Assembly (NCBI RefSeq): GCF_032062105.1 | Contig: NW_026937667.1 | Location: 1 to 64,000, forward strand | DNA from: Saccostrea cucullata | Lineage: Eukaryota | Reading direction: 5' to 3' | Length of the DNA: 64,000 bases | Part shown: positions 35,981-64,000 of the stretch, piece after piece | How the letters are laid out: every line of letters starts with the position of its first letter | How positions within the stretch are numbered: position 1 is the stretch's first letter | Position numbers and translations under genes: made by a program | The notes under the pieces: model-generated | Told to the model about the DNA's origin: nothing | The model's input: only the letters and a program-made list of their open reading frames with translations | Databases searched by the model: none

Positions 35981-38829
35981 ATGGCACATTTACTTAGATG
36001 TTTCCTGTATTGCCTGTTAAGCGAGTGTTTTATTGCTTTTTCATTGCTGAACAACCACAATTTTAGTACAGGAAATATGTCTGGAGAACTAGTGACCAAT
36101 TTTGCGTTGGAAAATTCTAATAGTTTCCGTCAGCTTCTTAACCAAGAAGCTCTTATTCGAGTGGCTCTGGCACAAAACGTTCACTCCTTAATGAAAGATA
36201 TTATGACAGTCAAGAATTCAATGCTCATGTTGGAAACAACTACAGAAAAATTCAAACTTGCAACCGAAAAGACAATTTTCCAGTTAGAAGCAGAAATAGA
36301 AAAGCTTAAATCGGAAAATCAGCGTTTAAGGAACGATTATGCAGATAAACATCGAAAATTAATTCCCTGTGATAATGAAACATTTCAAACAGTTAAAGAC
36401 TCAATTTCACAAATGCAAAAAAGTTTTGATACAAGGTTACAGATGATTGAAGAGAGGAAAGCGAATGTGTCATCTACTGCAGCTTTGGAGATGTCTTTAA
36501 CAAAAGTTTCAACTAAAATTGAAAGTAAGTAAATAGAACTAATACGCTTTATTACGGAAGCGTACATGGCTCTAGACTTGTTGTGTTATAACTTTGTATA
36601 TTGTCTTATACAGCTGGAATCAGACCTTCGGTGCTGATACATCAGAGACATGTGTAAAAGTTTATTCTATGTTAATTCCATATAAAACTATAAAAATCGT
36701 GACTCTGTTAGTGTCTTTGAGGTTTTAATGAATTAAGGTTCAATAATAAGAGAAAATCTCAAGGATGACCCATTTGACGGAAAACCATCCTGCACGGGGG
36801 TATATTTATGCCATCCACATAACCTTTTGTTATCATAGCGTATCATGCCATATCAAGAAAATATTCTCGTTAAGTCATGATAACTTTATGGTTTGTCGAC
36901 AAACATCGACTTCATGTCTCGTAAGTCAAGAAAAGATATCACATTTGTTGCGATAGCTATCTTGACATGACGAGATAACTTATCTTTAATCAAGAATCAA
37001 AAAGCTAGCGCAAAAAAACAATTGCTTATCTTTACTGGACAAGATATAAAGTCGGCGATTGTCGACACAAGAAAGTTACTGTATACTGGGAAATTTTAGC
37101 CCCGTTTTACTTTCGCCCCTTTCACCCTATCCTCTTTTGGGCAAATTCAAAACGGGGTGAATTCAAAGAATATTGTATAATTTCTTAAACAAAACTATAA
37201 CTGGGCGAATTTAAAACGGGACAAAATTATTTTGAAGTGTGGAAGGGCGAAAATAACACAGGGCGAAAATAACCCTGTATACAGTATCATTATTTGACGA
37301 GAACGTTATTTTGACTTAATTGGCATGATATGCTATGTTAACAAAAAGTCACATTCTCCTTTGGTGTCTTGTGTGCAATCTATCTTTCTAAAGTACTTGA
37401 ATGTTCTCCCAAATGAATAACTTAATCCCTTTTATTAACTTTATTGATTAGAACTTAGTTTGCAGTTATATTTGAAAAGGTACATGTATCTCGTTTAAAG
37501 AATATGATTTAATTTTATTTGGATTGTTTGCTTCTTACTTGGCACAATAGTATTTCTTAAGAATGTGCTGACATGACACGATTTTTTTTTCAGATGATAT
37601 GAACAAAACTATTGCCGATCTACAAAATGAAGTCAAGCAATCACGGTATGACCAACTCGAATTATCCTCTACTGTCTCGTCCCTCGAGGTGTTCCGATTG
37701 AACATCACTAAAAATCTATGTGGTAAGTTAAAGCGATTTTTAAAAATGTTGTTTATGATAAAATATTTTACATTTCAAAATTTCATCGTCCTAAAAAAAC
37801 TTTATTTCTACATAAATCTACTGGTTCATCAATAGATGTTGTTTAAAAAAATCATGTGTGGGGTGGAGACAGAGTTAAGCGGGGCTTGTAGCTTGTGGAT
37901 TTGCGGACTCAAGGGCATGTAAATATAAGGAATACATGTAACTGTAAGATTTTTTTTGTTTCATGACGATGATCAGTCGATTGGCTTGCTTGATAATTTT
38001 ATGCATAAACGCCTTCATGCAAATTATCACGCAAGACAATCAATTGATCACATCATGAAACCAAAGAATTACACAGATGTGTAATATAGAATTTCATGTA
38101 TTTCCTGAATTTTATGAAATACACGAAGGACATGAATTTTTTATGCATCGAGGAAATTCTTATAATTACTGTTTAGTTATGAAATACATGTATTACAACA
38201 TATGCGTTAAATCTTAAAAAAGGGAAAAAGGCATTTTTCCTTTTAATATATCTTAAGGGTCATTTTGGGAAACTTTTCCACTCGTATATTCATATAATTT
38301 CTTTTGAGTAAACTTCTTTTTGCATTTTTTGGACATTTTTGTCGGACAATATTTTAAAAAGTGCGTGGGGCCTATATCGCAAATGTGTCAAAATCAATAT
38401 TTTCACCATTTTACAATTGTAGACCTTTCTAAGAGAGTAGCTTTTACAGCTGGAGTAACGTCTTCTAGCAGCTCCTGGAGCGATGGAACCTTAGTGTACA
38501 ATAAAGTCATCAACAACGTAGGAGGAGGATATAACCCGAACACCGGAATCTTCACCGCACCAGTAGAGGGACATTATGTGTTCTACGTCAGTATCGTAAG
38601 TTACAGTAAAAACAATGATATATACGTAGATATCGTACTTAACGGATCTAGAAAGGTCAGAGCGATGGCAAAAAGATATGGTTCTGATGACGGATACGAA
38701 ACAGGTACCAACATGGCGACCTTCAGATTGCAGCAGGGAGACACGGTATGCGTCCAAGAATGGTCTGGTACAGGTTATTACTCTTATAGTGACGCTCCTG
38801 TTACCACGTTTTCTGGATTCCTGTTATAA
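35981..38829 (+). CDS. C1qDC gene 4, intact; join(35981..36524,37594..37722,38423..38829), 359 aa
   Basis: Signal peptide, coiled coil, 129-bp phase 1-1 exon and gC1q exon. All introns are GT-AG. 544+129+407 = 1080 nt in frame, ending TFSGFLL*. Confidence 0.9.
37079..37284. mobile_element. TA-flanked MITE nested in an older inverted-repeat element (~36825-37348)
   Basis: TA-CTGTATAC.GGG..ATTTT.GCCC / GGGCGAAAAT..CCCTGTATACAG-TA. Outer inverted repeat TTTTGTTATCATAGCGTATCATGCCA / TGGCATGATATGCTATGTTAACAAAA. Confidence 0.7.
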
Positions 38830-54973: not shown

Positions 54974-55057
54974 TTTAGGAATATTACGTTTATATATTTT
55001 GTATCATTTGTTGATCTATTATTTGTTTTCATTTTGTGGGCATGTTGTAAAACATGG

Positions 55058-58000
55058 ATGACAAGGATATTACAGACATTGACAAAGAAATACTCATATA
55101 GTATAAAGAAACATCCTGTACAAAACACATTCAAATGCATCACGTCTTACAAAGCTCAAGTTGGGGTAAACCAGAATGACCCTGAGGCTGGAATGTACGT
55201 GAAAGCTACCATCCAGGGGATTGAAGCGAATTTGCTTGTTGACACAGGAGCAACACTATCAGTACTGTCAAGTAAAGTTTATGAGGCTATACAAAACAAA
55301 CCAGTTTTGTACAAAACCGATCAAATAGTCTCTTCCGCATGTGGGACCGACTTAACTGTGAAAGGAAAAACTAGCATTTGCATTAATCAGGGTGAGAGTT
55401 TTTATAGCCAAGATGTCATTGTAGCAGATTTTTCTCTTGATGGAGTCATTGGACTCGACTTTATGAAGAAATACAATTGTACAATAGACATAGTTAATGG
55501 GTATTTTAAGGTAAACGACAAAGTTTACAAAGTTGATTTCTTTGGCAAAATCGGTTGCTTTAGAATTAACTCGAAAGAGATGATTGTCGTTCCTGCCAGA
55601 AGTGAGATAGTGACTTATTGTAAGGTCTCAATGCCGTCAAAATCCTACGACATGAAAGAAGTTTTAGGTATGATAGAACCATCGGAAAAGTTCCTCAAAT
55701 CAGGAAAAGCATTAATAGCAAGATCAGTTGGATATGTAAAAGATGGAGAAATACCAGTCCGAATGATGAATCCATCCCATGAACATCAAACTGTGTATCC
55801 GGGAACATTTATTGCGAATTTGAGTTCAGTTGACAATGTTTTTGAACCAACCTCTTCTGTAAATAAGCCATGCAAAGATCTTCCATCTCAACTGCAGGAT
55901 CTGTTTGAGAGATCTAAAGTTAATCTAAATGGTGGTGAAATACCTAAATTACAAAAGTTCTTGACTAGGTATGCAGATATATTTGCAAGGTCAGACAGAG
56001 ACTTGGGACGCACTTCACTGGTCAAACACACGATTGATACCAAGGATGCGCACCCACTAAATGAACCTCCTAGAAGAATTCCACATCATTTACAGGATGA
56101 AATGAACAAGCAGTTAGATGACATGCTTGACAGAAATATCATTGAGAAATCGAATAGCCCATGGGCATCAGGAGTCGTTTTAGCCAAAAAGAAAGATGGT
56201 TCTTTGCGATTTTGTGTGGATTACAGGCGTTTAAATGCAGCTACAGTCAAAGACGCCTACCCACTTCCACGCATCGACGACTCGTTAGACAGTCTTACCG
56301 GAGCAAAGTGGTTCTCAACCCTCGACTTGTGCTCCGGGTATTGGCAAGTTAGCATGGATGACTCAGATAAACTAAAAACGGCATCTGCAACTAAACGTGG
56401 TTTATACCATTTTAATGTTATGCCGTTTGGCCTTTGCAATGCCCCGGCAACCTTCGAAAGGCTAATGGAAACTGTTTTGAGTGGCTTGCAATGGCAAATA
56501 TGTTTGGTGTACCTAGATGACATCATTGTTATCGGAACATCGTTTACCAACATGTTAGAAAATCTTACACAGGTATTTGATAGACTGTCATCTGCTAACC
56601 TGAAACTGAAAGCAAGAAAGTGTCACTTGTTTCATAAGACTGTTGAATTTCTCGGACATGTGATATCAGAGGAAGGAGTAAGCACAGATCCTTCAAAAAT
56701 TTCTGCAGTACAAAATTTGTCTGTGCCTACTAATCTAACAGAGGTTAAAAGCTTTTTAGGCCTTTGCAGCTACTACAGACGTTTTATTCACAACTTCGCA
56801 GCAAAGGCAAAACCACTGAACAAATTGACTGAGAAGGGATCAAATTTCAAATGGACAGATGATTGTCAAGCATCCTTTGAATCCCTTCGACATGCACTTA
56901 TCTCCGCACCAATTCTTGCCCATCCTGACTTTACACAGTCATTTATTTTGGATACAGATGCTAGCGACGTAGCAATAGGGGCAGTTCTTTCACAGACACA
57001 AAACGGAGTAGAAAGAGTAATTGCTTTTGGAAGCAGAACCTTATCAAAAGCAGAACGGAAATATTGCGTTACAAGAAAGGAGCTGTTGGCTGTTGTCTAC
57101 TTTACAAAGTATTACAAACACTACTTGTATGGCAAGCAGTTTTTAGTCAGAACAGATCACAGTTCTTTGAAATGGCTAATGAACAGCAAGAATCCAGAAG
57201 GCCAGCTTGCTCGATGGTTTGAATCACTGAGCAATTTTCAAATGACCATTGAACACAGACCAGGGAATAAGCATGCAAATGCCGATGCGCTCAGCCGTTT
57301 ACCTTGCAGAAAAGCATGTTGTACATCTTCTGAAAGTATAGTTAATACCATAAGTAGCGCAACACCTACGGATAAATTGTCTTTGAAAGCCAAACAAAAC
57401 GGTGACAGAGACATAACTCAACTGATCAAATGGGTTGAAAAAGGTGTAAAGCCGGAGTCATCAGAGATTGCTGGTCAAAGCAACTTCATTAAGTCTCTAT
57501 GTTCTCAGTGGGATGCTCTGGTATTAGAGGATGGAATGCTCTTCCGAAAGAAAAAGCACAAAAATGGCAAAGTTTCTCTGCAAGCTGTTGTGCCATACAG
57601 TGAAAGACGAACAGTATTAGGACAGTTCCATGATGAAAGAACTTCTGCACATCTTGGGATAAAGAAAACATTGGCGAAGATAAAATGCAAATACTATTGG
57701 CCAGGATTGCAGAAAGATGTTAAATTGTACATTGCTGGTTGTGAAAAATGCCAAAGGCGAAAATCACCAAATACTACTAAACGTGCCCCAATGCAAGTTG
57801 TCACTTGCGGCGCACCAATGGAACGTATTGCTACAGATATATTAGGCGAACTTCCTATGTCCAATAATGGTAACCGATATATACTAGTCGTATCGGATTA
57901 CTTTATTAAATGGACAGAAAGTTTTCCTATGGCAAATATGGAAGCCGCAACTGTAGCTAAGGTGATAGTGGAAGAAGTCATAGCCCGCTTTGGAGTGCCT

Positions 58001-58834
58001 GGAACTATTCACTCCGATCAAGGAGTCCAGTTTGAAAGCAATCTTTTTACAGAAATGTGCCGGCTTTTGAATATAAAGAAAACACACACCACCCCGTACC
58101 ACCCCCAATCGGACGGGATGGTCGAAAGATTCAACAAAACTCTGGCTACCATGTTATCAGCCTATGTCAATGAGCACCATACGGATTGGGACGAACATCT
58201 CCCATACGTAATGATGGCATACAGAGCAGCAGTCCACGAATCAACGGGTGCAACTCCAAACAAAATGATGTTAGGTAGAGAGGTCGCTACACCTCTGGAC
58301 ATCGTATACGAGGTCCATTCTGATATTAAGAGAATTCCGCAGAATAGATGGGTTTGGGAGTTACAAGAAAAATCAGAAGAAGCACATGCAGTTGTCAGGG
58401 AAATGACAAAAGAGAGTATAGAACGACAGAAGTGGTACCATGATAGAAAGTTAAACTGGCAGTTGTTTAAGCCAGGTGACAAGGTTTACGTTTACTTCCC
58501 AAAACGTAAGACCGGTACATCTCCCAAATTCACGTCATATTGGCAAGGACCATTTGATATTATTGAGAAATGTTCCAATGTTACTTATAAAGTAAACTGT
58601 GGATACAGAGGTGCAAACCAAGTCATTCATACTGACAGGATAAGGCTAATGAAAGACCAAATCCTAACATCAGAACCTTTGCAAGCAAATAACATTGCAG
58701 AAAATACAATGTCTGATTCCTCTGAAAACATTGCTCAAGATGCCGAGGAAACATATGAAAAGGAGAGTTTTCAGGCAGATGGCAAACGAAAGAGAAGCAG
58801 ACCAGCCTACCTTAGTGATTACGTCTCTTTCTGA
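55058..58834 (+). CDS. pol: Gypsy Pol polyprotein (protease, RT, RNase H, integrase)
   Basis: Uninterrupted ORF with LVDTGA, LRFCVDYR, MPFGL, YLDD, TDAS, HHCC, D-D35-E (ATDILG/HSDQG/VERFN) and GPF motifs. First in-frame ATG at 55058. Confidence 0.95.
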   Translation: MTRILQTLTKKYSYSIKKHPVQNTFKCITSYKAQVGVNQNDPEAGMYVKATIQGIEANLLVDTGATLSVLSSKVYEAIQNKPVLYKTDQIVSSACGTDLTVKGKTSICINQGESFYSQDVIVADFSLDGVIGLDFMKKYNCTIDIVNGYFKVNDKVYKVDFFGKIGCFRINSKEMIVVPARSEIVTYCKVSMPSKSYDMKEVLGMIEPSEKFLKSGKALIARSVGYVKDGEIPVRMMNPSHEHQTVYPGTFIANLSSVDNVFEPTSSVNKPCKDLPSQLQDLFERSKVNLNGGEIPKLQKFLTRYADIFARSDRDLGRTSLVKHTIDTKDAHPLNEPPRRIPHHLQDEMNKQLDDMLDRNIIEKSNSPWASGVVLAKKKDGSLRFCVDYRRLNAATVKDAYPLPRIDDSLDSLTGAKWFSTLDLCSGYWQVSMDDSDKLKTASATKRGLYHFNVMPFGLCNAPATFERLMETVLSGLQWQICLVYLDDIIVIGTSFTNMLENLTQVFDRLSSANLKLKARKCHLFHKTVEFLGHVISEEGVSTDPSKISAVQNLSVPTNLTEVKSFLGLCSYYRRFIHNFAAKAKPLNKLTEKGSNFKWTDDCQASFESLRHALISAPILAHPDFTQSFILDTDASDVAIGAVLSQTQNGVERVIAFGSRTLSKAERKYCVTRKELLAVVYFTKYYKHYLYGKQFLVRTDHSSLKWLMNSKNPEGQLARWFESLSNFQMTIEHRPGNKHANADALSRLPCRKACCTSSESIVNTISSATPTDKLSLKAKQNGDRDITQLIKWVEKGVKPESSEIAGQSNFIKSLCSQWDALVLEDGMLFRKKKHKNGKVSLQAVVPYSERRTVLGQFHDERTSAHLGIKKTLAKIKCKYYWPGLQKDVKLYIAGCEKCQRRKSPNTTKRAPMQVVTCGAPMERIATDILGELPMSNNGNRYILVVSDYFIKWTESFPMANMEAATVAKVIVEEVIARFGVPGTIHSDQGVQFESNLFTEMCRLLNIKKTHTTPYHPQSDGMVERFNKTLATMLSAYVNEHHTDWDEHLPYVMMAYRAAVHESTGATPNKMMLGREVATPLDIVYEVHSDIKRIPQNRWVWELQEKSEEAHAVVREMTKESIERQKWYHDRKLNWQLFKPGDKVYVYFPKRKTGTSPKFTSYWQGPFDIIEKCSNVTYKVNCGYRGANQVIHTDRIRLMKDQILTSEPLQANNIAENTMSDSSENIAQDAEETYEKESFQADGKRKRSRPAYLSDYVSF

Positions 58835-59697: not shown

Positions 59698-60820
59698 CTT
59701 GCTTCACTAACATCTATCAATATTCCTTAGAGGGTCACGCCAGAGGTTTTTAATTTTAATTAGATCGGGATTCGTTAAGCTATATTTATATATTTTCAAG
59801 AGGCTCAAGTAAATGATGTGCAGGTCAATCCAAATTGAACATATCATTTCTCCAAGGATGAAACCAAATCTCTTGTGTACACAATCATTGATATTGTTAA
59901 AGTTAACAGACACCAGATCAGACCACTTCAGGACTTTTATTTTAGATGAAGGTGGAATACAAACCTAATAGTCAACAAAGGAATTCACCAATTTGATTCT
60001 GATTGGCTACTATTGATGTGAAATTGTGCAATTTTTATCCCAAGTACTTTTACATTAATTTTGCTTGAAGACATTATACGAGGGGTGAACAAAAAGTTCG
60101 CGAACTAATTGAATAACTTCCATAAAAGAAACTATATTTGGTTTCAGTGTTGATAATATTTTAATTGGTCCTCTCCGATTTTAATGCACATTTGCCACCG
60201 TTCTGCTCATGCGCAAATCACGTGATATTGGCGACAAGATTGCCACTTTTCCTAAGGATTAAGAATAAAGTTAAAATCTGTGAAGGTGCAAGGATGTGTC
60301 AATCAAGTTTTAATAACTTTTAAATGAAATAAGATTTTTAATTAACTTTAGTGTGAAATGCTATAAAAATATACAATTCGTGATATTATACAGAAAATAT
60401 TAACTTCAACTCTGTGTCCAAGTACCTTTAAAGCTTGTTTCCACTTTTGAGCTCTTCAGACTTATAAAGAAGTACATGTAATAATTGATCTCTCTTCTAT
60501 ATCCCTCCAAAATTAACCTTTCTTATCTGTATTTTCTACTCCTACATTTGTTATATACCTTTTTGAGATGCATTTTGCAAATTTGCAAAATTTTCTGACC
60601 TGACACTCATTTGCCCATTATGACGTCAGTACAATAATTCAAAAAATGTTATCTTTTGTCTCAGCTTGATCTTGGGAAGTTCATACTTGACACTAGACAA
60701 TGCTGTTATATTTTTATGCACCATCAGCAAGAATAACTGTTTATTTCACTATAAATTTGAGGTTGTTCTTATTAATATTTAATCTGTGGACTGTAAGGCA
60801 CATAAACATATTAGCAAAAA

Positions 60821-61373
60821 ATGGTAACGTTACTTAGATGTTTCCTACTTTGCCTGTTAAGCGAGTGTTTTATTGCTTTTTCATTGCTGAACAACCAAAA
60901 TTATAGTATTGGAAATATGTCTGGAGGACTAGTGACTAGTGACATGAGTGATGCGTTGGAAAATTCTAATAGTTTCCATCAGCTTCTAAATCAAGAAGCT
61001 CTTATTCGAGTGGCTCTGGTACAAAACGTTCACTCTTTAATGAAAGACATTATGACAGTAAAGAATTCAATGCTCGTGTTGGAAACAACTTTGGAAAAAT
61101 TCAAACTTGCGACCAAAAAGACAATTTTCCAGTTAGAAGCAGAAATAGAAAAGCTTAAATCGGAAAACCAGCGTTTACGGAACGATTATGCAGATAAACA
61201 TAGAAAATTAATTCCCTATGATAATGAAACATTACAAACAGTTAAAGACTCAATTTCACAAATGCAAAAAAGTTTTGATACAAGGTTACAAATGATTGAA
61301 GAAAGGAAAGCGAATGTGTCTTCTACTGAAGCTTTGGAGACGTCTTTGACAAAAGTTTCAACTGAAATTGAAA
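60821..61373 (+). CDS. C1qDC gene 5, exon 1 (close paralog of gene 4; continues beyond the window)
   Basis: Open signal peptide + coiled-coil exon closely matching 35981-36524, phase-1 donor A|GTAAGT, TATAAA at 60750. Confidence 0.85.
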
Positions 61374-62885
61374 GTAAGTAAATAGAACTAATGTGCTTTA
61401 TGCACACTATTACTATTTCTAGTCAGTTTGAATAAACCATTGATAAAGAATTTTATAGCAGGATGCATATAAATATCGAAGGAAAGTTACAGATATTTTA
61501 AAATTACAATTATCATGTTAATATGTTAGCAAGTTTAAATCTTTTTGATAAATAAATACAATTCTTTGAAAATTTACCTGTCTAAATGTATCATTTTTTC
61601 ATCGAAATAGTATCTATAAATTATGCTTTTGGTTTTCATCTATTATGGTCGTACAATTGAATAATAATTGAAATCCATCGTCAATTACGCGTGAGCTATC
61701 GTAATATTGATTTAATTATGGTTGCATCAAAAAGTTTTTATGGAGAAATAAGACGATATATAAAAGGATATACATGTAGTTCTTATTAATAACGCATAAA
61801 TTAAAATCATGATTCAATAATTTAAATATCACTACATATTTAAGTAGATTTTTTAAGGAAGAGCGGGACATTGAGCTGAAAAAAAAATCCAGTCAGTTAT
61901 TTTTTTTTCATATTTCTAATTACATGTATATTACTAATTGATTATGTCCTTAATATTTAAATCAGTCTTATCACTAGATTTTAAAGAAATCGCCCCACAA
62001 ATATCGCCCTGTATAGTTTTTGTATAAGTTTCGATTCTTCATGTTTACGGGTCCATTACCGAGTCAATAATGCGAATTTTTACGCACAGATAATAAATAT
62101 ATTAGATAATACGATCCATCAAAATATTTCAGAATATTCAGAGAGTTTCAATTATCTGAAAGCATTTTTTGAATTTCACATTCTATTTTGGTGGGATAAA
62201 TTTTGCACTTTTCAATACAGCTTCAAAGATTAAAACCTCATTTTGAAAAAAAAAAACTATGTCAATAATAATGGCTAAATTTTACATCAATATCAACTAT
62301 GACGTAATCCGTCTTTTGAGTCATGTGACATGTGCCCTGTTTCCACTTAAATATGTTTTAATTTGTACGAGAAATATGAATTAACAAACATATTATAGAT
62401 TGTAGTTACAATTTAAAGTAGGTTGATCGCAATTTTTGTTTTGTGACGCCACAAACTAATCGGATTTTGTATTATTTTTTAGAAAGAAAAAAAAAACGGA
62501 CAAAATTTACAATAACATATTTGAACTTTCTCCTTCACTACTGTTTAGGCTTAGTACAACATTTGCTGGATCCCACCATGCATCTTTGTTCGAGTGGCTT
62601 TAGTAAAAAACGTTAACTTTTTAATGAAAGACATTTTTAACATTAAAAAAATCAAAGCTCCTGTTGGAAAAAATCCAACTTCCAACTAAATGACAATGTT
62701 CCATTAAGATGCAGAATTAGAAAAGCTGAAATCGCAAAACTAGCGTCTACATGTATATAAAGAATGATAATGCAGATATGTGTAGAAAATCAATTCCTTA
62801 TGTGATCTGAACATTTCAAAAAGTCAGACTCAATTTTACAATGCAAGAAGTTTTTGACACAGGGATTTTACAATTTTTTTTTCAG

Positions 62886-62975
62886 GGTTACAGACAATTG
62901 AGGCAATGAAAGCAAACGTGTCATCTATTTCAGCTTTAGAGACGTCTTTGACAAAAGTTTCCTCTCAGTTGGGAA
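62886..62975 (+). CDS. Putative 90-bp phase 1-1 exon of gene 5 (RLQTIEAMKANVSSISALETSLTKVSSQLG)
   Basis: Poly-T + CAG acceptor, GTAAGT donor, open frame, paralogous to the last 30 codons of exon 1. Confidence 0.6.
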
Positions 62976-64000
62976 GTAAGTTAATAAAACTGATATGTTT
63001 TATGTGTTCTGTTATATATGAGAATATGTGAATAATGTCCTTATCTGACCAGTGAATATCTGGGAATACAGTTGTGCCATTAAAGTCAGACAGGAACTCG
63101 AGCCATGTATCTACGTCTTCGCGAAGTACCCTTGATATAGTTATATAATGGTGTTGTTTGTATGTTTATAATGCTATAGTCCTTGTGTCTATGTGAGCGG
63201 ACCTCAAAATTACTTCGAATTAACAGTTTTTCAATTTAACCGATTTCATTTTACCAAGTATTGTTTTCAAAGAAACTATACCATTTTTTAGGGGAATGCA
63301 GATTCATTTTAAAGTAACTGAATTTTTTTCAATTAAGAGAGTTTATTGTGAGTTCGAGTGTATTTACAATACAAATTATGACACATGACTGTGTTCACTA
63401 TACCTTGTCAGTCGAATTCATTCATACTGCATATTCCTCAAACTCCAATTTACTAATTTATTTATCTGCTAAAACACAACAGAAGATGATACCACTCACA
63501 AGATACCAACGGATAACATGATGAGTTAATGAAATTATGAAAATGAAAAGATAATATCAATTTATTAGGCCTATAGTATCCTTGTGAAAAGCCCGCGCTT
63601 TTGAAAATAGTTTGCGTATATGTGCATTTAGTAGCATATGTGCACAAAATGCTCTATCGCAATTAAACCCTAATAAGATAAATATCTTATTTGTCTTTTA
63701 ATTTAGTTTTTAAAAAAAATATTGATTTACATTTCCAAAGACTGAGATGTTAAAAATCTGTGTTTAAGTTTCGTCTCTCATTTTGACTATTTGTTTATCG
63801 GGAATATCAATCTGCCTGGACGCTGTTTGATTTTTTGTTTACTTTTTCTGTGGAGCTATTTATAGTTACTGTAAGAAAGGTGTCCGTCATGGCCTATAGC
63901 CAGGAATTTGCTTTCAGCAAAGCCCGGAAAAAAATCCAACTTGCAACTAAAAAACACTTTTCCATTAAGATGCAGAATTAGAACAGCTGAAATCGGAAAA

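What the first reader, a model, noticed from the sequence alone, without database searches (positions are those of the whole stretch)
62664..62981. Exon birth in progress: a duplicated half of exon 1 trimmed to a 90-bp in-frame exon by a newly inserted splice acceptor
Seen: 62664-62981 is a copy of the 3' half of gene 5 exon 1 (61091-61379), including its donor. The upstream part (62664-62862) carries indels and stops. Where exon 1 reads GATACAAGGTTACA, the copy has a short insert GATTTTTACAATTTTTTTTTCAG (poly-T + CAG). The 90 nt after it are stop-free, indel-free and phase 1-1, so they splice in frame. Gene 4 has no such copy. Inference: the insert created an acceptor, the upstream part became intron, and the 30-aa coiled-coil module is kept by selection. 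This would be a way to lengthen the stalk of an immune lectin.
Basis: partly seen in the sequence, partly recalled or inferred. Interest (0 to 1): 0.8.

Follow-up and report, generated by a model that had tools for sequence, protein, structure and literature searches.

The report
Duplicated stalk mini-exon in oyster C1q gene
A 90-base piece copied long ago from the first exon of an oyster C1q immune-lectin gene is a real, spliced exon that adds 30 residues to the protein's helical stalk; it is old and already annotated rather than being born now, and this contig carries five tandem copies of it.

Summary
Window 62586-63004 is a decayed copy of gene 5 exon 1 (61002-61402). Its last 90 nt (62886-62975) are open, indel-free and phase 1-1, between CAG and GTAAGT.

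RNA-seq raw reads show the joint 61373^62886 (46 reads in two runs, plus contigs in two more). They then run from 62975 into the C1q exon, and the decayed part has almost no coverage. So it is a real exon.

- It is not "in progress". The copy is about 20% diverged from its parent, predates the split of four paralogous exon 1s, and sits in three other contigs. RefSeq for Saccostrea cucullata already annotates it as coding sequence.
- The "inserted acceptor" is not an insertion. Outgroup paralogues carry a homologous 21-nt coding stretch there, and the parent lineage deleted it. The AG is ancestral and the T-run arose by substitution.
- Substitution density against exon 1 is equal on both sides (22%). 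Constraint shows only in indels, stops and later divergence.

Beyond the window the exon occurs five times in a young 2.35-kb tandem array that carries a MITE. No read carried gene 5's private bases, so use of this particular copy is inferred from relatives.

The parts
60821..61373 (+). Gene 5 exon 1: hydrophobic N-terminus plus helical stalk, 184 codons + 1 base (ends in phase 1); donor GTAAGT at 61374
   Evidence: ORF; donor read; equals the N-terminus of RefSeq protein P0008
61002..61402 (+). Parent segment of the duplication: 3' two thirds of exon 1, the donor and about 28 nt of intron
62586..62862 (+). Decayed copy of the interior of exon 1, now intronic: 5-8 stops per frame, at least 4 indel events
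   Evidence: RNA depth about 1 against about 37 on the exon
62863..62885 (+). 3' splice-site block (TTTTAC branch-like motif, T9, CAG). It is the relic of an ancestral 21-nt coding stretch that the parent exon 1 lineage lost.
   Evidence: alignment with five outgroup exon 1s; AG 62884-62885 used in the RNA joints
62886..62975 (+). 90-nt phase 1-1 exon (A1) encoding a 30-residue helical stalk module. It is the first of five tandem copies; the others lie at contig 65234, 67583, 69936 and 72288.
62976..63004 (+). Donor GTAAGT and the copied start of intron 1
   Evidence: (family D2); 44 reads in X23 run from 62975 into the start of the C1q exon
63005..63928 (+). Spacer of the tandem unit. It is also present upstream of the single copy in C6900 and C9842.
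63929..64000 (+). Start of the second decayed copy (unit 2), 5'-truncated. At contig 64037 it is interrupted by a 1081-bp MITE.
37594..37722 (+). Gene 4 exon 2 (129 nt, phase 1-1), unrelated to the 90-nt exon. This is the exon type that is widespread in the family.

Best explanation
Gene 5 encodes a secreted oyster (Saccostrea cucullata) C1q-like type II protein: hydrophobic N-terminus, alpha-helical stalk, globular C1q head.

In the common ancestor of a small paralogue clade, about 400 bp covering the 3' two thirds of exon 1 and its donor were duplicated into intron 1. (The clade is gene 4, gene 5, and the genes on contigs C9842 and C6900/C8840.)

Inside the copy, an AG already present in the coding sequence (ancestral TCAG|AG) became a 3' splice site. 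This happened when the roughly 9 bases before it mutated into a T-run. Because exon 1 ends in phase 1 and that AG lies at phase 1 of the old reading frame, the last 90 nt of the copy splice in frame between exon 1 and the C1q exon.

The result is a second copy of the 30-residue terminal stalk module in the protein. The rest of the copy decayed into intron. The parent exon 1 later lost the homologous 21 nt by an in-frame deletion, which is why the copy appears to carry an insert.

The exon then spread among paralogues, probably by recombination in the phase-1 introns. On this contig it was recently amplified to five copies, in a 2.35-kb unit that includes a MITE.

Shown: homology, phases, the RNA joints in close relatives, constraint among copies, and the array. 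Inferred: the order of events, that gene 5's own copies are spliced, and that extra modules lengthen a trimeric coiled-coil stalk.
For: - Homology and extent of the copy.
- Phases of exon 1 and the C1q exon.
- RNA:
  - Joint 61373^62886 (GT..AG) in X23 (35 reads, 25 starts), X24 (11 reads), X1 (1 contig) and X2 (3 contigs).
  - Loose end behind 62975 equals the start of the C1q exon (44 reads in X23).
  - Depth on the exon bin is about 37 against about 1 on the decayed part and 25-50 on exon 1.
- RefSeq proteins contain the module once (P0006, 345 aa, C9842), four times (P0008) or five times (P0007) on this contig.
- Constraint:
  - Among copies, 35 variable + 9 gapped of 193 columns in the decayed part against 7 of 90 in the exon; Fisher p 0.019 and 0.0016.
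  - Exon against parent: omega about 0.3, no indel.
- Age: the copy clade is sister to the four exon 1s. Stems are 0.134 + 0.065 substitutions per site against crown branches of 0.02-0.045.
- The 'insert' aligns with a 21-nt coding stretch in five outgroup exon 1s. The proteins agree: P0005 and P0003 have 7 more residues there.
- C1q domain: PF00386, E 1.5e-27.
- AlphaFold model of P0008: one helix from residue 170 to 302 through the modules, then a beta sandwich.
Against: - No RNA read carries gene 5's private bases or its 9-nt private insertion. All reads carry the alternative base at 13 gene-5-private positions, and G instead of T at 62930. The joint is therefore shown for close relatives (C9842-like alleles or paralogues), not for this very copy.
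- No exon-to-exon (62975 back to 62886) joint was seen, so multi-module transcripts are unsupported by these four runs.
- Substitution divergence from the parent is the same in exon and decayed part (22%).
- The omega test rests on 29 codons and is marginal.
- The copies compared are not independent, and gene conversion could add to the lower variability.
- The structure model has low confidence (mean pLDDT 63.6), and a monomer cannot show a coiled coil.
- The five-copy array could not be checked against DNA reads.
Confidence: 0.8

Rival explanations
1. Exon birth in progress: a young duplicate in one gene, with the acceptor created by a fresh insertion and inclusion still partial.
For: The copy, the acceptor and the open 90 nt exist. 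RefSeq lists a skipping isoform for the C9842 gene (P0001), so inclusion may not be complete everywhere.
Against: - The copy clade is about 0.2 substitutions per site from the parent and predates the paralogue split.
- The same copy is present in C9842, C6900 and C8840.
- The 23 nt are ancestral sequence, not an insertion.
- No loose end at 61373 made the list, against 35 joint reads plus 12 more reads entering 62886 from an exon 1 end.
Confidence: 0.05
2. On this contig, gene 5 with its five-exon array is a silent or decaying haplotype-specific copy, or the array is partly an assembly artefact. Only the single-module relatives are functional.
For: - No RNA read with gene-5-private bases in four runs.
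- No public RNA run held more than 0.18 of exon 1's words.
- Gene 5's exon 1 has 13 private substitutions and a private 9-nt insertion relative to all four relatives.
- Units 1-4 are 98-100% identical.
Against: - All exons are open with intact splice sites.
- The units differ at scattered sites, mainly in the MITE's satellite, so they were resolved as separate copies.
- RefSeq models use four or five modules.
- The RNA came from other animals, and oyster immune genes vary between individuals.
Confidence: 0.3
3. The 90-nt exon is the ancestral state (a separate small exon), and the end of exon 1 arose by intron loss or fusion.
For: The exon keeps ancestral-looking residues (QTI, SSI, Q-G) that outgroup exon 1 ends also have and that the parent clade changed.
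Against: - Homology to exon 1 runs about 300 nt upstream of the acceptor, through a stretch full of stops and indels. So much more than the exon was copied.
- All outgroup genes have the module once, inside exon 1, followed directly by the next exon.
- In the tree the copy is nested as sister of the gene 4/5 clade.
Confidence: 0.03

Closest known systems
Tandem exon duplication as a source of new exons (Kondrashov and Koonin 2001, Letunic et al. 2002, from my own knowledge; human duplicated exons reviewed in PMC9741552)
   Same: A neighbouring exon is the source, the copy keeps phase and donor, and the product is a repeated protein module.
   Different: The textbook cases are mostly whole-exon copies used in a mutually exclusive way. 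Here only part of a first exon was copied. It had no acceptor of its own and gained one from its own former coding sequence. Parent and copy are used together in one transcript.
Bivalve sC1q-like type II genes: signal peptide, coiled-coil tail, C1q head (Gerdol et al. 2019, PMC6835236)
   Same: Same architecture and the same tandem-cluster setting. That paper describes type II as the majority class in oysters, expanded by tandem duplication and unequal crossing over.
   Different: In the passages I searched, that paper treats duplication of whole genes with conserved architecture. Here the unit of duplication is a stalk exon inside the gene, so stalk length varies between paralogues or haplotypes (0, 1 or 5 extra modules).
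Copy-number-variable exon arrays that set protein size, such as the kringle IV-2 repeat of human LPA (from my own knowledge)
   Same: A kilobase-scale unit with in-phase exons is repeated head to tail at near identity, and each unit adds one module to the protein.
   Different: One 90-nt exon per 2.35-kb unit and five copies. Variation between individuals and expression of the array are not shown here.

Membership tests
C1q-domain-containing protein, secreted C1q-like type II | C-terminal globular C1q domain | tested here: met
   PF00386, E 1.5e-27, full profile 1-127, on the exon at contig 73482-73880
C1q-domain-containing protein, secreted C1q-like type II | N-terminal signal peptide | not tested
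   The start is hydrophobic (MVTLLRCFLLCLLSECFIAFS), and AlphaFold gives a helix at residues 2-24. No signal-peptide predictor was run.
C1q-domain-containing protein, secreted C1q-like type II | Coiled-coil tail instead of collagen before the C1q domain | tested here: inconclusive
   There are no Gly-X-Y repeats. The model is helical from residue 43 to 302 with two short breaks. Pfam gives only weak matches to coiled-coil families. COILS was not run, and a monomer model cannot show oligomerisation.
Exon derived by duplication of a neighbouring exon | Sequence homology between the exon and the neighbouring exon beyond chance | tested here: met
   About 420 nt at 71%, E 1.5e-58; 21 of 30 residues identical
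Exon derived by duplication of a neighbouring exon | Symmetric phase, so that inclusion keeps the frame | tested here: met
   90 nt, phase 1-1; exon 1 ends in phase 1 and the C1q exon starts in phase 1
Exon derived by duplication of a neighbouring exon | Splice sites used in RNA | tested here: met
   Joint 61373^62886 in four runs, and continuation from 62975 into the C1q exon. The reads come from close relatives, not from this copy.
Alternatively spliced cassette exon | Both the inclusion and the skipping form present in RNA | tested here: inconclusive
   RefSeq lists a skipping isoform (P0001). In one search no loose end at 61373 made the list, but 12 rows were not shown.
Exonised transposable element | Exon sequence derived from a repeat family | tested here: not met
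   A genome search with the exon finds only the eight copies and exon 1 ends of the family. The MITE lies in the intron.

The most novel reading that the evidence does not exclude
The stalk mini-exon is a copy-number-variable array: haplotypes of one oyster C1q lectin locus carry one or five modules, and relatives carry none. The five-module form would be expressed, giving length-polymorphic stalks on the same recognition head. The array would have been made within the last 1-2% of sequence divergence by unequal crossing over between units.
Probability: 0.3. Interest if true: 0.55.

Novelty: new member of a known kind. Interest (0 to 1): 0.35.

Why it matters
This is a clean, datable example of how part of a first exon, copied without an acceptor, can become a new internal exon. 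A coding AG at the right phase gained a pyrimidine run by a few substitutions, while the rest of the copy decayed.

It also shows that oyster C1q lectin diversity is built at more than one level. Whole-gene duplication is the process described so far. Here in-phase stalk exons are also added, swapped between paralogues and multiplied.

If stalk length alters reach or oligomer geometry, this would be a further axis of immune-receptor variation. The exon itself is already in the RefSeq annotation, so what is new is its history, not its existence.

Tried and rejected
- Public RNA runs holding gene 5's exon 1: none held more than 0.18 of its words. I therefore laid two unindexed raw-read runs of the species at 90% likeness. 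This brought in relatives rather than gene 5.
- A counterpart of gene 4's exon 2 in gene 5, C9842 or C6900: none.
- My first reading of the 23 nt was a local micro-duplication of the adjacent CAGGGTTACA plus T-run slippage. I dropped it when the outgroup alignment showed homologous coding sequence there.
- Intron loss as the source of the exon 1 end: rejected (see rivals).
- Simple tandem duplication of the unit 62668-63928: it does not fit, because the sequence after the fifth exon is unrelated to the spacer. A better fit is two older copies (units 1 and 5, 4-6% apart), a MITE insertion, then amplification of a 2349-bp unit running from 62769 to the end of the MITE.
- Whether C9842 and C6900/C8840 are haplotigs of this locus or paralogues elsewhere: unresolved. 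C6900 is a mosaic of a gene-4-like 5' half and a gene-5-like 3' half.
- Two tree runs failed on a thread setting and were repeated.
- I built no joined spliced model for any search. Searches used single exons by reference and the public RefSeq proteins that the word search returned. In scripts only the split codons at exon ends were completed, to read the frame.
- The large representative search was not used.

Full report
**What is in the sequence**

The window is the first 64 kb of an 82,258-bp contig. Matching RefSeq proteins and their contig lengths identify the genome as Saccostrea cucullata. The window holds a tandem cluster of genes with a C-terminal C1q domain.

Gene 5 has these parts:
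- Exon 1 at 60821-61373: 553 nt, hydrophobic N-terminus, then a long helical region, ending in phase 1 with donor GTAAGT.
- A C1q exon at contig 73480-73883, whose acceptor is also phase 1.

Window 62586-63004 is a copy of 61002-61402, the 3' two thirds of exon 1 plus the donor and about 28 nt of intron.
- Its first 277 nt have 5-8 stops in every frame and at least four indel events.
- Its last 90 nt (62886-62975) are open and indel-free. They are preceded by a branch-like TTTTAC, a run of nine T and CAG, and followed by GTAAGT.

**Is the exon used?**

I laid two raw-read oligo-dT RNA-seq runs of the species, and the contigs of two further RNA runs, on 60700-63900 at 90% likeness.
- The joint 61373^62886, with GT..AG ends, is seen in 35 reads (25 start positions) in X23, 11 reads in X24, one contig in X1 and three contigs in X2.
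- Behind 62975, 44 reads of X23 continue with the first 30 bases of the C1q exon. They differ from gene 5's copy at one base.
- Depth on the bin holding the exon is about 37. It is 25-50 along exon 1 and about 1 over the decayed part.
- No loose end behind 61373 made the list, so skipping is at most a minor form in these samples.

The exon is real, and the decayed part is intron.

**The caveat on which copy is expressed**

The reads are mostly 90-95% like the window. At 13 positions where gene 5's exon 1 differs from all four relatives, every read carries the relatives' base. Fourteen of 15 reads lack gene 5's private 9-nt insertion. All 62 reads over 62930 have G, not the T of copies 1-4. The best-fitting genomic copy is the gene on contig C9842 (20 of 26 variant positions).

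So the junction is shown for close relatives with the same acceptor block. It is not shown for the copy in the window. No public indexed RNA run held more than 0.18 of exon 1's words.

**Beyond the window**

The exon occurs five times on the contig, at 62886, 65234, 67583, 69936 and 72288. The first four are identical and the fifth has four substitutions. All have the same splice signals.
- Units 2-5 carry a 1081-bp MITE inside the decayed part. It has perfect 22-bp terminal inverted repeats, a 7-bp target duplication and internal 83-bp satellite arrays in both orientations. The family is high-copy in the genome.
- Units 1-4 are 98-100% identical over the shared parts. The first 108 nt of units 1 and 2 are only 94% alike, and unit 5 is 95-96% like the others around the exon.

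The simplest history has three steps. There were first two older copies (now units 1 and 5). The MITE then inserted. Finally a 2349-bp unit was amplified recently. This order is inferred. I could not check the array against DNA reads.

**The same copy in other contigs**

The same decayed copy, acceptor block and exon occur once each in three other contigs: C9842, C6900 and C8840. In each it lies between an exon 1 (90-91% to gene 5's by BLAST) and a C1q exon (86-90%).
- C6900 and C8840 are identical in exon 1 and show the same layout.
- C6900 is a mosaic. Its promoter and exon 1 match gene 4 (94%), and its 3' half matches gene 5.
- Gene 4 itself has no copy. It has an unrelated 129-nt phase 1-1 exon (37594-37722) of a type found at 20 or more places in the genome.

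All introns concerned are phase 1, so recombination within them swaps or multiplies stalk exons without breaking the frame.

**Age**

A maximum-likelihood tree was built from the copies (23 nt removed) and the exon 1 segments. It places the five copies as sister to the four exon 1s of genes 4 and 5, C9842 and C6900, apart from the outgroup paralogues (support 89). The stems are 0.134 and 0.065 substitutions per site, against terminal branches of 0.02-0.045.

The duplication is therefore several times older than the paralogue split. 'In progress' does not fit.

**The 'inserted acceptor'**

Five outgroup exon 1s were aligned with the copies: C6011a, C21477, two copies near C6011:227 kb, and gene 2 of the window. 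All carry, at exactly this place, 21 nt of coding sequence that aligns with the copy's extra 23 nt. The match includes an exact ATTTTACA in one outgroup and the TCAG that ends the block. The proteins agree: P0005 and P0003 have seven more residues there than gene 5.

This gives the following account:
- The copy kept ancestral sequence, and the parent clade lost it by an in-frame deletion after the duplication.
- The AG of the acceptor is the ancestral TC-AG-AG.
- The T-run replaces CTTGA(G/T)T by about four substitutions. Slippage then took it from T7 in unit 5 and C9842 (T6 in C6900 and C8840) to T8-T10 in units 1-4.
- That AG lies at phase 1 of the old frame, the phase in which exon 1 ends. 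This is why the exon reads on in the ancestral frame.

**Selection**

Against the parent, substitution density is the same in the decayed part and the exon (41/182 against 20/90). The difference lies in indels (14 columns against 0) and stops.

Among the copies, after they separated, the decayed part has 35 variable and 9 gapped columns of 193, and the exon has 7 of 90. Fisher p is 0.019 for substitutions alone and 0.0016 with gaps.

Omega is about 0.3 for exon against parent and in most pairs of copies, on only 29 codons.

This is consistent with purifying selection since the exon was established. The copies are not independent samples, and gene conversion is not excluded.

**What it does**

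An AlphaFold model was made of RefSeq protein P0008 (gene 5's exon 1, four modules, C1q) with 17 homologues. Its mean pLDDT is 63.6. It gives one helix from residue 170 to 302 through all modules, followed by the C1q beta sandwich.

Gerdol et al. (PMC6835236) describe this architecture as 'sC1q-like type II'. It is the majority class in oysters, and the coiled-coil tail is taken to drive oligomerisation.

That each module lengthens such a stalk is an inference. Thirty residues is not a whole number of heptads, and the module's hydrophobic spacing has 3-3-4 breaks.

**What is known**

RefSeq already annotates the exon:
- LOC134275302 X1 (345 aa, with the module) and X2 (315 aa, without it) on C9842.
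- LOC134248621 on this contig, with four modules (P0008) or five (P0007).
- P0007 joins gene 4's exon 1 to gene 5's array across 26 kb. This may be a modelling effect of reads from a C6900-type gene.

Exon duplication as a source of repeated modules is textbook. I found no paper on exon-level stalk duplication in bivalve C1q genes, but three word searches are a narrow basis.

The scan's other note on this window (s1-703944) proposed a tandem array from the second copy at the window's end. That is confirmed.

**Verdict**

The exon is genuine, old, established and already annotated. Its acceptor was made from former coding sequence, not by an insertion. The young five-copy array is the part most worth following up.

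Noticed in passing
L013:4037-5117 (contig 64037-65117), repeated in units 3-5: A 1081-bp foldback MITE. It has perfect 22-bp terminal inverted repeats (GTTGCAACCACTATTGAAATAA), the 7-bp target duplication AATGCAG, and internal 83-bp satellite arrays in opposite orientation. The genome search gave 242 matches from at least 1149 candidates, many at 95-96% identity, so the family was recently active.
   Followed up: partly
window 35981-36524 joined to contig 62886-73883 in RefSeq protein P0007: The RefSeq isoform LOC134248621 X2 joins gene 4's exon 1 to gene 5's five-exon array and C1q exon across about 26 kb. It skips gene 4's own exons, a Gypsy element and gene 5's exon 1. It may reflect reads from a C6900-type gene mapped onto this contig.
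   Followed up: partly
L018/L019 (C6900:10001-24841) and L020 (C8840): The gene on C6900/C8840 is a mosaic. Its upstream region and exon 1 match gene 4 (90-94%). Its spacer, copy, exon and C1q exon match gene 5's 3' half (88-90%). Its downstream flank matches the flank of gene 3 (88-92%). This indicates unequal recombination within the cluster, or a structurally different haplotype.
   Followed up: partly
L022:2950-5650 (C6011:224950-227650) and L024 (C3737): Another family member has two successive copies, about 2.3 kb apart, of a longer (about 60-residue) 3' part of exon 1. The second ends in GTAAGT. This looks like an independent duplication of the stalk end.
   Followed up: no
window 3554-3943: Gene 2's exon 1 contains an internal tandem repeat of the 'IP-x-N-x-TFQTVQ...' stalk module (two copies in one open frame). 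The family also lengthens its stalk inside exon 1.
   Followed up: no
window 62292-62351, 62122-62164 and 63020-63163: Short blocks inside the introns collect RNA reads that run on into unrelated sequence on both sides. These are probably repeat fragments transcribed elsewhere, not exons of gene 5.
   Followed up: no
window 60821-61373: Gene 5's exon 1 has 13 substitutions and a 9-nt insertion (around 60937-60948) that none of the four relatives nor any RNA read shares. The copy is fast-evolving, unexpressed, or absent from the animals sampled.
   Followed up: partly
window 55034-58834: A 1266-codon open frame with a protease, reverse transcriptase and integrase look (Gypsy-type retrotransposon) lies between genes 4 and 5. 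It was seen in the ORF list only.
   Followed up: no
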